A DNA stretch of 64,000 nucleotides from Diadema antillarum (lineage: Eukaryota), in contig NW_027271172.1 of NCBI RefSeq assembly GCF_040938485.1, forward strand, positions 1,426,001 to 1,490,000, read 5' to 3'. Shown in pieces: positions 9,140-63,567 of this stretch (positions are counted from its first letter, which is position 1; every line of letters begins with the position of its first letter). The notes under the pieces were generated by a model, which saw only the letters and a list, made by a program, of their open reading frames with translations, ran no database searches and had not been told where the DNA came from. The position numbers were made by a program, and so were the translations under genes.

Positions 9140-9730
9140 TAATTTGAAATAATTTGTCCTTGTTGAGAGAAATTACCTCGCCGGCTTTTCTCCACTGCTC
9201 TCGCATACAGTCGGCACTAATGATATTGAAACGTCCTTCCGATATGCCACTAACCCTTTCTCTTTCAAACCAATTAAATCATCGTATTACTAATCAGCAT
9301 TAACCTATTGTGCGTGAATTGCAATTTTCACCATTATCTCGAGCTTTCAAAGGGAGACGTGAAAGTCAATCTCGCTAGATTCCAAGATTAAATTCGTAAA
9401 ATGAAGGTGACAGCCAATTACACAAAGTAGATTATTATAGATGATTAAAGAACGATAGAAATAGAACTAAAACAACGTCAACAGTAATTTTTGTCTACCT
9501 TTTTTTCGCCAATACCCTGTCAGAAATTATTGCATTTGCTCAGTCAGACGGAGTGGCTCTCTAGTTTCCTATCATTGGGCGAGATAAGCATATCTCAAGG
9601 ATACTGCTATTACTTCTTCTCTATTTGACTTTGACAAATGCGCTGATTTACCTCAAACAATTTGCACTCTACTGCTCGGAAGATACTGACAGCTTTTCTT
9701 AGTACGTGAAACTTTATCGCACGGAGAATG
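9140..9730 (+). promoter_or_regulatory. Gene 1 putative promoter and exon 1
   Basis: Homologous to 32010-32618 and 54390-55003; ends in AATG|gtaagctcagtc in all three copies. Confidence 0.55.
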
Positions 9731-12700
9731 GTAAGCTCAGTCTGTAAATCGAAAGCAGTCAGACTGTTAGGCCTACGTATTTCAAGCTTAATCGCTTGCC
9801 ATAAGATGGTGGTCTCCTGTATTCAATTATTTCTATCATTTATTGAAAAATACTTTATACCTTTTTGTATGTTTCGGTGTATGTATATTGCTCAAAAGAA
9901 TTCCCAAGAATTATTTTGTAATATCTTGTAATATGTTTGAACTGTCACGCAGCTACCAAACAATATTGAATATTCAATTGTAATAATAATGGAGGGATGA
10001 TGAAATCACATTAAAATTTTTGTTTCAAACAAAATGTTATATGGTATATTGATAAATATTATATACATTATATATATATACATGTATATACAATTAATTT
10101 TTTGTTATGTAATACAACAGATATAGGTTAAATATTACTGTAGGTTGTGGGGTCAGACCCTCCACTAATTATAAAGTTACTTTTAACAACCTGTGTAATG
10201 GTTCTCATTTCATATATGCGTGTTCCGGTATATTCTTTAAGAAGTAAAACAACGGCTATAACAAATATTGTGAAGGCTAATACACCATGTGCACTGAAAC
10301 CATGCAAATCATTAACGCGATTTTTTAAAAACTTTCCATATACAGTGCAGCTATTTAATCGAGATATCTTTACTCTCGCCGAATAGAATGATACAGCTGA
10401 TTGCAGGTATCATCTTTTAAAAAATTCTTTATTCATGTTCACTTTACAAGGAAATCACATCACAGTGCAGATCTGTCAAAATTATTGTCATCACAATAAG
10501 ATTTCAAGTAGTCCCCCTTATATATATTTTCATCTATATTCATTTTTAGTCACCAGAGTGAATATTTATATAGGCTACATGAAGAGACATACTACTCGTA
10601 TAAAAGTGCAAACAATGCCCCATGAATGAAATGCCTTTTTTTTTTCTTGCTGTTCTTTGCTTTTTCCAGAACATCCCAAGGGCGTCAATATTCGGTTACT
10701 GGGTGTTGTACATTCTTCACCTGGGTAAGATAATGATTCATGTTGATTTCCATTAAAGTTTGAATGAATTGTATATATCAATACCTTTTCCTCCCAAAAA
10801 ATGTCTTCAAACTGCTCTATAATAATTACAGCCAAAATACTCTCACATGCAATTTGTTTCTTTCGGTAAATGCAATTTTCTGATTTTGAAAGCAAATTTA
10901 TCTATTTTTAGAAGCATATGACCCGACTTCTCATTTAGCTGTCAAACATATTGGTTTTAACCCAGTGTGTACTTCAAATTACGAAGTTATCTAGATTTAA
11001 AATGACTTATCAGGCCTGGTCCATTGTGACAATATAAGTATTGTAAATTTTTGTCTATTTGTTATAAATTCAGTCTTCAGGGCGGTATTATCTGGTATAA
11101 AAACCACGTCTCAGGTATTGGCTATCGGCTAAACCCTGCATGTTCTACATTCTGTCTACATGAGGTTTGGAAGATTAGTAATGTTCTCAATTCTCCTTGA
11201 GCGTTAAAAAGCATGACAGTTCTAACTTACACGTACGAACACAAATTTTAATACGTCATGTGGTCAGTCACATCAGTGTTTAGAAAGCTAAATGATTATT
11301 ATTTCTACTCAGAAGAAGCTGATCCTTGTATAAGCTATATCATCAGCTTTCTTTTTGCACACATTGTCCTAATCTGTTCTTGATAGATCTACATTTATAA
11401 TGAGCATCCCTGCAGCCCACTCTAATACTTTTGGACTAAGATGGTGGAAATAGGCCTGTATTTATTATTCATATTGACTTGCTTCTCTGTTAATCATAAT
11501 GATTATTGAGAACAAACGCTCACCAGTTGCTGACAGAAATTTCTCTTACCGACATGCAGCGTCGCCGACCCCATACGACCGCCACACTTGCCACACGAAC
11601 GGCTATGGTCTGAATTACACGCTGCCTAAGATCAAGGGATGTCAGAAGACAGTAGGTCCAGACGGACACCTGGTCCAGAATATTCCCAAATTGTCCCCGG
11701 CCTCATCTGCGGAACTGAGCTGCCGGAACCAACGGCAGAGTCGTCTGGGAGTTCCACAAGGAATGATCGTCTGTCAAATACCTGGTGGGCATTTCTTTTT
11801 CCTGTTTCAAGAATTACGTAATATTGAATACATGTTCCTCAGTCGTTCGCACTTGTCATATCTCATTTAATTGCTCAATTCAGCTTTGATATATCCAAGG
11901 AGATTCAAGCGATGGAATCATAACAGTCGAGGGGTGCGTTAAACAGCTCTGCTAAAGCCTACCTTACCGTACCTTACCGGCGCCATTTCCCGATCTGTTC
12001 CAAACAAAGAATAAAATGTTTGTTCCCCACTACCTACTCATAATACGCTCTTTGGTTCAGAAGTTGGCATGAGAAGAATGTGCGTAACACACTAACGTCA
12101 TAATACGAAGAGTTGATTCTCTTTGTTAGGGACACCTGTCAATAAGCGCGACAGGTGCATGACCCTGTTGCTACAAAATGTATCTGACTGAGGTACGTTT
12201 TCTTCAAAGAGATCTCAAGCGCTACAAATCCGGCATGTTATGGCATGGTTAGCTTTTACTTGAACACTTGAACGTGACCTTTTCCCTTTGATCCTATGAG
12301 AGTATTTGAAGCATGTGCGAAACTGAAGCTGCCCCACAGATAGGAAAACACTTGATTCATGTCACATTGCATAATGACCTACCACTCTCCAATTAACATC
12401 ATGTTCCGCGGACTATGTCTTTATGATGGCAATCACTTTTCGCTGTTCCTATTTATGATAAAATATGAACTGGACATGTCTGGACACTAATCTGACATAA
12501 TTAAGAACTATAACATAGTGATAAGTTTCAACTGTCGGACTTGACCGGGATAAAAAGGGGGAAAAACAGCTTTCTAATGAGGGTACAGTTTAAAATACTT
12601 TCACAAAATACGACTCAGATTTATATTTTGTCGCACGTATTTCTTGACGGAATTGATTTTTGTTTCTGGATGCTTTATCATTAGGTGGAATTTAATTTCA

Positions 12701-13366
12701 TGACTGGCAATATCTCCCCGACATTATGTTGCGTTCAAAATGTATCTTGCGATTGCTGAGAGAGAGATGGGAACATCAAATCCCGATCATAAAAGGCACA
12801 AATGCTCATGTTGAATTCTTATGTGCATCCATTGAAAACTGACAGCTCTTGAAATAAAATTGGTCAGTTGGAACTCCAGCTCTTGAAACTCCTTGTTTTG
12901 AGTTTAAAAGAGATGCGGTCACAACCGTCTCTTTCCTTTTGAGACCATGGTTGATGCCATTACGCAAAAACATTCGAATAATGTGCCAAACTGGATCTAC
13001 CTCACAGATATTATAGGAGAACAATTAATTGGTTTTGATAAAGCCGTACATTATAAAGCGTTCAACATTCGAGGTGGCCCATCAGGCCCACCAGAAAATA
13101 GATTTGGGCCACCAAAGAAAAACGTATACTGTCGAGCGTTGATATATCACCATATATATTATATGTATATACAAAATATGATTTCATATCATCGATATTG
13201 ATGTCAAAGATTGCCAGAGCAACCCGTGCTTTTCTGGGTGGTGTGAAGAAACCATGACAGCGTATGAGTGTCACTGTCCGCCGGAATACACTGGAATTCA
13301 TTGCGACGAAGGTAGGAGTACGTTAATATCTTGTAAAGCAGCAGTAAAGGGTGTGTGTGTATGTGT

Positions 13367-62364: not shown

Positions 62365-62411
<47 letters not shown>

Positions 62412-63567
62412 ACGTTAATGAGAATGAATTCAAAACAGCTTTCGATATACTTGAAGAGAAATATTATAGCAGTTTTATCTGACGGAATTAGAGGGATGGT
62501 ATAGTGTTGGTTGAGATGAGGATTGGGCTTTTAACTTTCTGTGAGATACCAAGAAACTACTTATGAAAAAATACAGAACATACCATTCTAAGAGGTATTC
62601 AAAGTTTATTAGATGAAAATCGGTTTTGGAATTGCTATGACATCCAAAAACAAAGTAAAACAAAGCTATTGTATAATAAAAGGTGGGTCCTACCTTTTAT
62701 TAGGATCGCCTTGAGTTGGATATCTTAGCCATTTCAAAACCAGTTTTCATCAAATAAATGTTGAATCCCTCTTGGAATTACATACTCTTTCATATTTCAA
62801 AAGAGGTTTCTCTTTATCTTACCAAATAATGTTAGAAACCCCAAGTTAGGTCTCAACCAAAACTATACGATCTCTTCAATGAGAAAAATGATAAAATCGG
62901 CTTTCAAGGAGTGTACAATTTCAAACACTCTCACAACAAACTGCTCTGGTTTACACTTTTTCACATTTCTAGAGCCCTATTTCTGAATGGAATTAAACCA
63001 TTTTTTGCATTGAATCATATTTTATCAATAATTGAAGTTTCATTTTATTTAAAAAAAAAAGTGATGGTCCTAAATCTCTCTCCGGTGGGTCCGCGAGTCT
63101 TCGGGCCTTCGGACCTGCGTGGATATTATTTATAATACAATTATCAAGATCAAAGTCTTGCGTCAGTGTACCTTTTGATCCCTTTGATATTATTCACATT
63201 GTAAAAGTGTTGAAACTCGTGCCATCACAAACAGTCAAACCAAGCTCTGGACCAAGCCCTCTCAAAAAATAATGGAAATAAACAGAAATAGGTAAATAAA
63301 AAGAAGGAAATATGAACAGCCAAACACTATTAGGCCTATACTTGCATTTGTACTAATTTACAGTCTTGTAAGCACGATTCATTTTGTTATCATGAAAGAG
63401 AAGATATTATCAGGCCTACAAAAAAAAAGAAGAAAATTTCTCTATATTTGATATTGATGTCAAAGATTGCCAGAGCAACCCGTGCTTTTCTGGGTGGTGT
63501 GAAGAAACCATGACAGCGTATGAGTGTCACTGTCCACCGGAATACATTGGAATTCATTGCGACGAAG
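55001..63567 (+). CDS. Gene 3: paralog, 5' part only (continues beyond the window)
   Basis: Exons 55001-55003, 55696-55750, 61666-61893 and 63466-63567 are near-identical to gene 2 exons 1-4. Confidence 0.75.
55696..55750 (+). CDS. Gene 3 exon 2, signal peptide ([18 protein letters not shown])
   Basis: tttttag|AAC...G|gtaag. Confidence 0.75.
55839..61110. mobile_element. 5272 bp non-autonomous DNA transposon, TAGTC termini, 3 bp TSD (ATT), subterminal arrays of about 160-175 bp units
   Basis: ATT|TAGTCTGGGTGCCA...TGGCACCCAGACTA|ATT. The matching site in gene 2 (about 33450) is empty. Confidence 0.85.
56221..57727 (-). mobile_element. Solo-LTR-like insertion nested in the DNA transposon arm
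   Basis: AAAAC|TGTCAC...GTGACA|AAAAC: TG..CA ends and a 5 bp TSD. AATAAA lies near the minus-strand 3' end. Confidence 0.7.
61666..61893 (+). CDS. Gene 3 exon 3, N-terminal domain
   Basis: 228 nt; one residue (A to T) different from gene 2. Confidence 0.7.
62055..62365. repeat. Gene 3 copy of the tRNA-Thr-like inverted unit (shorter)
   Basis: tRNA-like part at 62077-62154 (-). Shares the inversion junction cccaaaggaagc|ctttcttgtttc with 36001-36022. Confidence 0.7.
63466..63567 (+). CDS. Gene 3 EGF-A exon
   Basis: [34 protein letters not shown], donor G|gtagg. Confidence 0.8.

What the first reader, a model, noticed from the sequence alone, without database searches (positions are those of the whole stretch)
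9728..63567. Tandem family of secreted [novel domain]-(EGF)9-(SRCR)2 proteins hidden from the ORF track
Seen: three head-to-tail paralogs; two full splice models give open frames of about 657 and 653 aa with a signal peptide and no transmembrane segment. Known: SRCR genes are a greatly expanded, coelomocyte-expressed family in sea urchins, and some carry EGF modules. Inference: a soluble pattern-recognition, adhesion or gamete-surface family with a calcium-binding EGF stalk presenting a C-terminal SRCR pair. I do not recognise this exact architecture.
Basis: partly seen in the sequence, partly recalled or inferred. Interest (0 to 1): 0.75.

Follow-up and report, generated by a model that had tools for sequence, protein, structure and literature searches.

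The report
Sea-urchin secreted EGF–SRCR gene trio
Three neighbouring, intact genes of the sea urchin Diadema antillarum each encode a secreted protein made of a small urchin-only head domain, a rod of calcium-binding EGF repeats and two scavenger-receptor domains. This is a local variation on a gene class already known to be hugely expanded in urchins, and its only real novelty is the unnamed head domain, which also caps dozens of other urchin proteins.

Summary
Every intron is GT-AG, every domain exon is phase 1-1, and there are no stops. Followed beyond the window, g3 is intact but has 7 EGFs and 581 aa.

Pfam confirms the EGF and SRCR exons. No transmembrane-like stretch was found.

The "novel domain" is a real 75-aa, 4-Cys exon. 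It has no Pfam, PDB-sequence or fold match. It is not unique, though:
- A profile search finds it at the N-terminus of about 30 protein clusters; every named hit is echinoid.
- The genome holds at least 85 matching exons.
- It is usually followed by the same odd EGF (GWCEETM) and then by varied heads: fibrinogen, C-lectin, F5/8C, HYR, SRCR, EGF or mucin.

The exact cassette–cbEGF–2×SRCR order was not found in any other protein. EGF+SRCR genes in tandem clusters are already described as typical of urchins (PMC10855680).

No RNA run was listed, so expression and function remain inferred. The N stretch lies in a g1 intron, and a tenth EGF exon there cannot be excluded.

The scan has noted other SRCR–EGF mosaics in this genome, but not this family.

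The parts
9728..9730 (+). g1 start codon at the very end of exon 1 (ATG|GTAAG). The 5' limit of exon 1 is unknown.
   Evidence: ATG|GTAAGC is conserved in g2 (32616) and g3 (55001). About 500 nt upstream is alignable among the paralogs. This is the least certain exon, because it is inferred without RNA data.
10670..10724 (+). g1 signal-peptide exon (55 nt, phase 0 to 1)
   Evidence: The acceptor and donor are conserved in all three copies. It has the highest hydropathy of any exon. dN/dS against g2 is 0.19.
11560..11784 (+). g1 N-domain exon (225 nt, phase 1-1): the echinoid-specific 4-Cys domain
   Evidence: There is no Pfam hit. Only 7 DNA matches exist in the 1.75-Gb assembly, all in this gene family, so it is not a dispersed repeat.
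13210..13311 (+). g1 EGF1 exon (102 nt): the atypical, non-calcium-binding EGF with the GWCEETM motif, second half of the N-terminal cassette
   Evidence: PF00008, 1.3e-05. There are no nonsynonymous changes against g2. The predicted junction reads ..IP-D-C.., matching the P-D-C junction in the annotated urchin homologs.
14610..17290 (+). g1 cbEGF exons 2-5: 14610-14723, 14847-14960, 15690-15803, 17177-17290 (each 114 nt, phase 1-1)
18281..18431 (.). N stretch inside the g1 intron between EGF5 and EGF6. Its content is unknown and was not looked up.
18784..23193 (+). g1 cbEGF exons 6-9: 18784-18897, 19683-19796, 20618-20731, 23080-23193
   Evidence: EGF7 and EGF8 are 96% identical to each other, which points to a recent internal duplication.
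23900..24244 (+). g1 SRCR1 exon: a divergent SRCR with 4 Cys
   Evidence: (PF00530, 2.2e-09). dN/dS is 0.69 and dN is 0.35 against g2.
27568..27899 (+). g1 SRCR2 exon with the stop codon: a canonical SRCR with 6 Cys
   Evidence: (3.4e-23). dN/dS is 0.23.
32616..34231 (+). g2 5' part: ATG 32616-32618, signal-peptide exon 33313-33367, N-domain exon 34004-34231 (5 Cys)
37453..47143 (+). g2 EGF exons 1-9: 37453-37554, 38891-39004, 39791-39904, 40724-40837, 41740-41853, 43615-43728, 44519-44632, 45297-45410, 47030-47143
48089..50130 (+). g2 SRCR1 exon 48089-48418 and SRCR2 exon 49799-50130 (with stop)
   Evidence: 2.8e-12 and 5.3e-22
55001..63567 (+). g3 5' part inside the window: ATG 55001-55003, signal-peptide exon 55696-55750, N-domain exon 61666-61893, EGF1 exon 63466-63567. 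The gene continues past the window end with 6 more EGF exons and 2 SRCR exons, and stops about 25.3 kb beyond base 64000.
   Evidence: 581 aa, open frame

Best explanation
This is a lineage-specific cluster of three intact paralogous genes in Diadema antillarum. There is one cluster per haplotype, and the family is confined to this locus. Each gene encodes a secreted, glycosylated, cysteine-rich mosaic protein.

Shown: the anatomy.
- A signal peptide.
- An echinoid-specific N-terminal cassette: a 4-Cys domain of about 70 aa with the motifs LNYTLP, IPKL and GIPxGxRVCRIP, followed by an atypical EGF with GWCEETM.
- 6 to 8 calcium-binding-type EGFs, each on its own 114-nt phase 1-1 exon.
- Two C-terminal SRCR domains. 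The proximal one diverges quickly. The terminal one is canonical and conserved.
- No membrane anchor.
- The family grew by tandem gene duplication plus gain and loss of single EGF exons.

Inferred: the mechanism.
- The cbEGF run forms a calcium-stiffened rod that holds the SRCR pair away from the N-terminal cassette.
- The SRCR pair binds ligands such as polyanionic microbial or matrix surfaces, as soluble SRCR proteins do.
- The shared cassette is a common handle, for self-association or for docking to a cell or matrix partner. Urchins have fused it by exon shuffling to many different recognition heads.

The most likely role is a soluble recognition or bridging protein of the SRCR superfamily. 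Tissue, ligand and immune involvement are not shown.
For: Gene reality:
- Open frames run across 12-14 exons in all three paralogs, with canonical and conserved splice sites and matching phases.
- dN/dS for g1 against g2 is 0.40 overall. It is 0-0.28 in the signal peptide, EGF1-5 and SRCR2, and 0.69 in the N-domain and SRCR1.

Domains:
- Pfam EGF and SRCR hits.
- SRCR2 aligns over its full length with CD163, DMBT1, Mac-2BP, MARCO and SCARA5 domains.
- EGF2-9 all carry D-x-D/N-E-C and the C-x-D/N-x4-F/Y-x-C motif.

Secreted: the only strongly hydrophobic stretch is the signal-peptide exon, and the stop codon follows SRCR2 directly in all three genes.

Cassette:
- The profile search gives 33 hits with E<=1e-3. 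Three of these (P0020, P0026, P0032) match only part of the profile and look spurious. Every hit that carries a species name is echinoid, including one D. antillarum protein.
- Most matches begin within the first 60 residues.
- The same GWCEE EGF follows in most of them.
- Partner domains are fibrinogen, C-lectin, HYR, F5/8C, SRCR, EGF, Methyltransf_FA, somatomedin B and mucin-like.
- This genome holds at least 85 N-domain exon matches, many with the EGF exon 1-6 kb downstream.

Family size: the SRCR2 and N-domain exon DNA each have only 7 matches, which are the 3 genes here plus their haplotype copies.

Species: the assembly length of 1,754,659,819 bp equals that of GCA_040938485.1.

Context: EGF+SRCR genes in tandem arrays are typical of urchins.
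Against: - There is no transcript evidence. No RNA run was listed, and no protein in the searched libraries contains this family's N-domain or SRCR2.
- Exon 1, which contributes only the ATG, rests on conservation alone.
- The signal peptide was judged by hydropathy only.
- The N-domain's dN/dS of 0.69 is based on few substitutions and is only weakly below 1.
- The N-domain model is of modest confidence (pLDDT 68).
- The self-association test gave no answer.
- Ligand binding, calcium binding and any immune role are inferred from family knowledge and were not tested.
Confidence: 0.6

Rival explanations
1. The genes and architecture are the same, but the role is structural or developmental rather than recognition of non-self. 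It could be an extracellular-matrix, biomineral-matrix, cell-adhesion or gamete-surface protein in which the cbEGF rod and SRCR pair mediate self or matrix contacts.
For: cbEGF rods are typical of matrix proteins, from knowledge of the fibrillin and fibropellin families. Cassette-bearing relatives include mucin-like, hyalin-like (HYR) and fibropellin-3-like proteins. Nothing here ties the family to coelomocytes.
Against: Many cassette partners are classic lectin-type heads: fibrinogen/ficolin-like, C-lectin, F5/8C and SRCR. SRCR1 diverges quickly (dN 0.35) and EGF copy number varies between paralogs. Both are more usual for recognition families than for core matrix proteins.
Confidence: 0.25
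2. The models are partly wrong or the genes are not expressed as drawn. Possibilities are that the N-domain exon or the ATG-only exon is not used, that further exons exist (for example in the N stretch), or that one or more copies are silent duplicates.
For: There is no RNA evidence. No library protein carries this family's N-domain or SRCR2, although at least one D. antillarum NCBI model is in the collection. Symmetric phase 1-1 exons can be skipped without breaking the frame. The left flank of the N stretch resembles sequence upstream of EGF exons.
Against: All three paralogs and their haplotype copies keep every exon open, with intact splice sites. The predicted N-domain-to-EGF1 junction recreates the P-D-C junction of the NCBI- and eukprot-predicted homologs in other urchins. 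dN/dS is below 1.
Confidence: 0.12

Closest known systems
Sea-urchin SRCR superfamily genes (SRCR-SF of S. purpuratus; PMC10855680)
   Same: They carry SRCR domains joined to EGF-like modules, which are the commonest partner domain. They are arranged in tandem clusters, built with one domain per exon, and differ in domain number between sibling paralogs.
   Different: This exact order (cassette, then 6-8 cbEGF, then 2 SRCR) was not found in any library protein. The family is private to one Diadema locus. SRCR1 has only 4 Cys.
S. purpuratus 'DMBT1-like isoform X2' (P0043) and 'fibropellin-3-like' (P0045)
   Same: Both carry the N-terminal cassette (N-domain + GWCEE EGF), although in P0043 the N-domain is cut short at its start. 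P0043 continues with 4 SRCR domains and P0045 with 6 EGFs.
   Different: Each has only one of the two C-terminal module types, and a Ser/Thr-rich linker follows the cassette. The Diadema proteins combine both module types and have no mucin linker.
Vertebrate soluble SRCR proteins (DMBT1/SALSA, CD5L, Mac-2BP, SSC5D)
   Same: They are secreted proteins whose SRCR domains bind ligands. SRCR2 aligns over its full length with DMBT1, CD5L and Mac-2BP domains.
   Different: The Diadema proteins have no CUB, ZP or BACK-like parts. The stalk is made of cbEGF rather than SID or mucin spacers. This is a functional analogy only, not orthology.
Collectins and ficolins
   Same: The design principle is the same: an N-terminal cysteine-bearing region, a rod-like stalk and C-terminal recognition heads. 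Several cassette proteins in urchins carry ficolin-type fibrinogen heads.
   Different: There is no collagen stalk, oligomerisation is not shown (one search gave no answer), and there is no sequence relationship.

Membership tests
SRCR superfamily | At least one SRCR domain scoring above the Pfam PF00530 gathering score | tested here: met
   38.0 and 47.3 bits (SRCR1), 82.3 and 78.5 bits (SRCR2), against a cut-off of 26.1. One search shows PDB SRCR matches.
SRCR superfamily, group A or group B | From my own knowledge of the classification: group A has 6 Cys and is encoded by two or more exons; group B has 8 Cys and is encoded by one exon. | tested here: inconclusive
   SRCR2 has 6 Cys but sits on a single exon, and SRCR1 has 4 Cys on a single exon. 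It fits neither class cleanly. [quoted passage not shown]
Calcium-binding EGF (cbEGF) arrays | An N-terminal D/N-x-D/N-E/Q-C, the Asx-hydroxylation motif C-x-D/N-x4-F/Y-x-C, and six Cys | tested here: met
   The motifs are present in EGF2-9 of g1 and g2 and EGF2-7 of g3. Pfam EGF_CA gives 2.1e-05 and 25.1 bits, just under the 27-bit cut-off, because the exon-only translation lacks the leading Asp encoded by the split codon. Calcium binding itself was not tested. Several units carry a 7th Cys.
Echinoid N-terminal cassette proteins (unnamed; defined here) | An N-domain straight after the signal peptide, with 4 conserved Cys and the motifs LNYTLP, IPKL and GxRVCRxP, followed by an EGF with GWCEE | tested here: met
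   hits down to 1.8e-13; nearly invariant C11, L17, N18, Y19, P22, C27, I41, P42, K43, C54, G67, C71, P74; own genome.
DMBT1/SALSA family | SRCR repeats together with CUB and zona pellucida domains | tested here: not met
   No exon in the models encodes CUB or ZP, and the protein ends right after SRCR2.
Fibropellins and Notch-type EGF proteins (names NCBI gives to some homologs) | A long EGF array with a C-terminal avidin-like domain (fibropellin), or LNR/ankyrin parts and a transmembrane segment (Notch) | tested here: not met
   The C-terminus is an SRCR pair and there is no transmembrane-like stretch.
Collectin/ficolin | A collagen-like Gly-X-Y stalk | tested here: not met
   No collagen exon is present. 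The stalk is made of cbEGF.

The most novel reading that the evidence does not exclude
The N-domain plus GWCEE-EGF cassette defines a so far undescribed, echinoid-restricted superfamily of secreted proteins. In it, one common N-terminal handle (for oligomerisation, or for docking to a shared cell-surface or matrix partner) has been joined by phase 1-1 exon shuffling to many alternative recognition heads: ficolin-type fibrinogen, C-lectin, F5/8C, HYR, SRCR, cbEGF and mucin. This would be an urchin-specific counterpart of the collectin/ficolin design. The Diadema trio would be its cbEGF-stalked SRCR branch.
Probability: 0.25. Interest if true: 0.6.

Novelty: new variant of a known kind. Interest (0 to 1): 0.4.

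Why it matters
By itself the trio is one more product of the well-known shuffling and tandem expansion of SRCR and EGF modules in urchin genomes.

The part worth following up is the N-terminal cassette:
- It is a conserved small domain, found here only in echinoids.
- It has no Pfam family, no solved relative and no confident fold match.
- It heads dozens of secreted proteins with lectin-type domains in at least four urchin species.

Naming and characterising this cassette would organise a sizeable set of 'uncharacterized', 'mucin-like', 'notch-like' and 'ficolin-like' annotations. It would also give a handle on candidate humoral recognition proteins in Diadema antillarum, a species hit by repeated disease die-offs.

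Tried and rejected
- RNA evidence: the look-up of sequencing runs listed no RNA run for window:23000-29000. None was listed, which does not mean none exists. Read laying could therefore not be used.
- N-domain as a dispersed repeat or transposon piece: rejected, because there are only 7 DNA matches in 1.75 Gb, all inside this gene family.
- Conserved block 10131-10223 as an extra exon (10145-10227): rejected. Its 83 nt would shift the frame and clash with the phase of the following exons (read and the phases).
- Fold of the N-domain:
  - AlphaFold gave pLDDT 62 with 33 alignment rows and 68 with 53 rows.
  - Foldseek against the PDB gave nothing at E<=0.001.
  - The VIA second look gave nothing at Z>=2.
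  - The VIA wide search first timed out and then found no match at Z>=2 among 48,161 chains.
  - With a model of this confidence, none of this shows a new fold.
- Other N-domain searches: the ESM Atlas gave no usable hit. The PDB profile search matched only the EGF part. Pfam at E<=5 on 53 members showed no recurring family for the N-domain.
- Homodimer of the N-domain (complex prediction): no answer, so it is no evidence either way.
- The search for homologous proteins:
  - P0024 region 1-125 found only itself.
  - The SRCR2 exon found nothing at E<=1e-20 in the 60-190 aa range, so no transcript-derived fragment was found.
  - These results are limited by the tool's length window and word index.
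- Papers naming the homologs' accession numbers: none found.
- The 281-aa ORF at 42562-43407 and other long ORFs outside the genes have no Pfam family.
- The joined spliced proteins were not built, searched or folded. All searches were made exon by exon.
- The letters of the N stretch were not sought in the other haplotype contigs.

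
Full report
**What is in the sequence**

A six-frame scan finds 19 EGF-type six-cysteine units on the + strand. They lie in three groups: 13212-23186, 37455-47136 and 63468-63560. The list of long ORFs adds four open SRCR-like stretches, two after each of the first two groups. Self-alignment shows three head-to-tail paralogous units starting near 9.2, 32.1 and 54.5 kb.

Every EGF unit is bounded by an AG acceptor and a GT donor in phase 1. Working upstream by paralog conservation, I found three further conserved exons in each unit:
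- An ATG sitting directly on a GTAAG donor.
- A 55-nt exon for 18 hydrophobic residues.
- A 225- or 228-nt exon for a 4- or 5-Cys domain.

Checked exon by exon (frame, split codons and phases, without joining letters), g1 sums to 657 codons plus stop and g2 to 653 plus stop. No exon holds an internal stop.

**The third gene and the size of the family**

I fetched the 40 kb that follow the window on the same contig. This completes g3: six more 114-nt EGF exons and two SRCR exons, giving 581 aa with an open frame. The paralogs therefore differ in EGF number (9, 9 and 7).

Unit-by-unit comparison shows which EGFs correspond:
- EGF3, EGF4 and the last EGF are one-to-one across the genes.
- The middle units have been duplicated or lost independently. 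For example, g1 EGF7 and EGF8 are 96% identical, as are g2 EGF2 and EGF5.

The N-domain exon and the SRCR2 exon each have only 7 DNA matches in the whole 1.75-Gb assembly. These are the three genes here plus copies on two other contigs. That assembly retains both haplotypes, with 84% of BUSCOs duplicated (PMC13511894). The extra contigs are therefore haplotype copies, and the family is private to this one locus.

**The N stretch**

Bases 18281-18431 lie in the g1 intron between EGF5 and EGF6. No partial EGF exon touches either edge. Because all EGF exons are symmetric 114-nt phase 1-1 units, the frame is unaffected whatever the stretch contains.

Continuity itself cannot be tested. The left flank resembles g2 intron sequence that lies about 175-190 nt upstream of EGF exons. 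The spacing of the g1 exons is also about 4.8 kb larger on the other haplotype contig, judging by coordinates only. A tenth EGF exon therefore cannot be excluded. I did not fetch or fill the masked letters.

**Domains**

Pfam on single exons gives:
- EGF: 1.3e-05 to 9.1e-07.
- EGF_CA: 2.1e-05 (25.1 bits, just under the 27-bit cut-off, because the leading Asp comes from the split codon).
- SRCR1: 2.2e-09 and 2.8e-12.
- SRCR2: 3.4e-23 and 5.3e-22.

SRCR2 aligns over its full length with CD163, CD5L, DMBT1, Mac-2BP, MARCO and SCARA5 domains. SRCR1 is a weak, divergent SRCR with four Cys.

EGF2 to the last EGF all carry D-x-D/N-E-C and C-x-D/N-x4-F/Y-x-C. EGF1 does not. Several EGFs have a seventh Cys exactly where many cbEGFs have the O-glucosylated Ser (C-x-C-x-P-C). 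Mature g1 has 70 Cys, g2 has 73 and g3 has 61.

Only the signal-peptide exon is strongly hydrophobic. No exon holds a transmembrane-like stretch, and the stop follows SRCR2 directly.

**Selection**

Nei-Gojobori counts for g1 against g2 give dS 0.28, dN 0.11 and a ratio of 0.40. By exon:

| Exon | dN/dS |
|---|---|
| EGF1 | 0.00 |
| EGF4 | 0.08 |
| EGF3 | 0.12 |
| Signal peptide | 0.19 |
| EGF5 | 0.22 |
| SRCR2 | 0.23 |
| EGF2 | 0.28 |
| EGF9 | 0.53 |
| N-domain | 0.69 |
| SRCR1 | 0.69 (dN 0.35) |

The exons are under constraint. The two ends of the protein behave differently: SRCR1 and the N-domain evolve fast, while the cassette EGF and SRCR2 are held.

**The 'novel domain'**

The N-domain exon has no Pfam family at E<=1, nor at E<=5 across 53 members. 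It is not unique, however.

A profile of five copies, searched against 1.84 billion cluster representatives, gave 33 hits at E<=1e-3, the best at 1.8e-13. Three of them (P0020, P0026, P0032) match only part of the profile and look spurious.
- Every hit with a species name is from Strongylocentrotus purpuratus, Lytechinus variegatus, L. pictus or D. antillarum.
- The match covers nearly the whole domain, and in most hits it begins within the first 60 residues.
- In most hits the domain is followed by an EGF carrying the same GWCEETM motif as EGF1 here.

The predicted N-domain-to-EGF1 splice (..IP|D|C..) recreates the P-D-C junction of those predicted proteins. This is independent support for the junction.

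What follows the cassette differs from protein to protein:
- Ser/Thr-rich mucin-like tails.
- HYR plus C-lectin, or C-lectin alone.
- Fibrinogen heads (annotated 'ficolin-like', 'ryncolin-like', 'MFAP4-like').
- SRCR plus two F5/8C domains.
- Four SRCR domains ('DMBT1-like', P0043).
- Six EGFs ('fibropellin-3-like', P0045).
- Methyltransf_FA, somatomedin B or LDL-receptor repeats.

In the Diadema assembly the profile finds at least 85 N-domain exons in many clusters, often with the GWCEE EGF exon 1-6 kb downstream. Forty of them were fetched and aligned. They share C-x-DGY-x-LNYTLPM-x3-C, a variable loop, IPKLIP, a third Cys, a basic R-x-S-R-like stretch and GIPxGxRVCRIP. They end at a phase-1 donor.

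No protein in either search has the cassette followed by a cbEGF run and two SRCRs. The exact architecture was thus not found elsewhere, within the limits of those searches.

**Fold of the N-domain**

AlphaFold with 53 alignment rows gives a small all-beta model with pLDDT 68 and pTM 0.44. Foldseek, VIA second-look and VIA wide searches of the PDB gave no match. The PDB profile search matched only the EGF portion, and the ESM Atlas gave nothing. With a model of this confidence, that means 'no assignable fold', not 'new fold'. A homodimer test gave no answer.

**What it most likely is and does**

Shown: three intact genes for secreted mosaic proteins built as cassette, then cbEGF rod, then SRCR pair. 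They arose by tandem duplication and by gain and loss of EGF exons.

Inferred from family knowledge:
- cbEGF tandems form calcium-stiffened rods.
- SRCR domains of soluble proteins bind polyanionic microbial or matrix ligands.
- The cassette's combination with many lectin-type heads suggests a shared handle for oligomerisation or docking.

I put about 0.85 on the gene models and architecture and about 0.4 on a soluble recognition or bridging role. A matrix, adhesion or gamete role is the main rival.

**Comparison with what is known**

In S. purpuratus, EGF-like is the commonest partner domain of SRCR genes (127 occurrences, 31.6%), and 70% of SRCR genes lie in tandem clusters with variable exon-domain structure (PMC10855680). 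The trio is thus a new variant within a known kind. The element not described anywhere I could search is the echinoid N-terminal cassette.

Earlier notes of this scan on the same genome record other SRCR-EGF mosaics, but not this family or cassette.

**Limits**

- No RNA run was listed, so expression, exon 1 and N-domain inclusion are unproven.
- The joined proteins were not searched or folded.
- The masked stretch was left as it is.

Noticed in passing
window 31345-31614: A nested, near-perfect palindrome lies in the spacer upstream of g2. Its arms are 56, 52 and 29 nt long and 95-100% complementary. Rfam at gathering threshold reports no hammerhead there.
   Followed up: partly
window 42562-43407 (+): A 281-aa open frame sits in the g2 intron between EGF5 and EGF6. 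It looks like the C-terminal part of a LINE-type retroelement protein, but it has no Pfam family at E<=1.
   Followed up: partly
window 34441-34509(-), 35822-35893(-), 36213-36285(+), 62079-62151(-): Four tRNA-like Rfam hits lie inside the long introns between the N-domain and EGF1 exons of g2 and g3. They are most likely heads of tRNA-derived SINEs.
   Followed up: no
window 27566-30000 vs 49797-52232: SRCR2 plus about 2.1 kb downstream of the stop is 92% identical between g1 and g2, whereas SRCR1 is only about 73% identical. This suggests a recent gene-conversion tract or a long conserved 3' region.
   Followed up: no
L003/L007/L002 (other haplotype contig, the gene matching g2): On the other haplotype, the g2-like gene has SRCR1 and SRCR2 exons 100% identical to g2, but its N-domain exon is only about 90% identical and lacks the fifth Cys. 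This is mosaic allelic divergence, or conversion between paralogs.
   Followed up: partly
EGF exons of g1-g3, e.g. window 14610-14723, 15690-15803, 38891-39004: Several cbEGFs carry a seventh Cys at the position of the O-glucosylation Ser (C-x-C-x-P-C). There are 2 such units in g1 and 4 each in g2 and g3. Their pairing is unknown.
   Followed up: no
L051 (about 33-39 kb past the window end, - strand): Another gene with at least seven EGF exons of a different, Notch/fibropellin-like type lies on the opposite strand, about 8 kb downstream of the g3 stop codon.
   Followed up: no
own genome, e.g. contigs C10 (1.41-1.64 Mb), C595 (0.50-0.68 Mb), C179, C775, C745, C727: Clusters of N-domain exons, many followed by the GWCEE EGF exon, occur across the genome: at least 85 matches, a count that includes both haplotypes. 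Their downstream domains in Diadema were not examined.
   Followed up: partly
window 1423-1948: Overlapping 93-119-aa ORFs lie on both strands in the part of the window with the highest GC (41.6%), upstream of the family. The three of them that were scanned have no Pfam family.
   Followed up: partly
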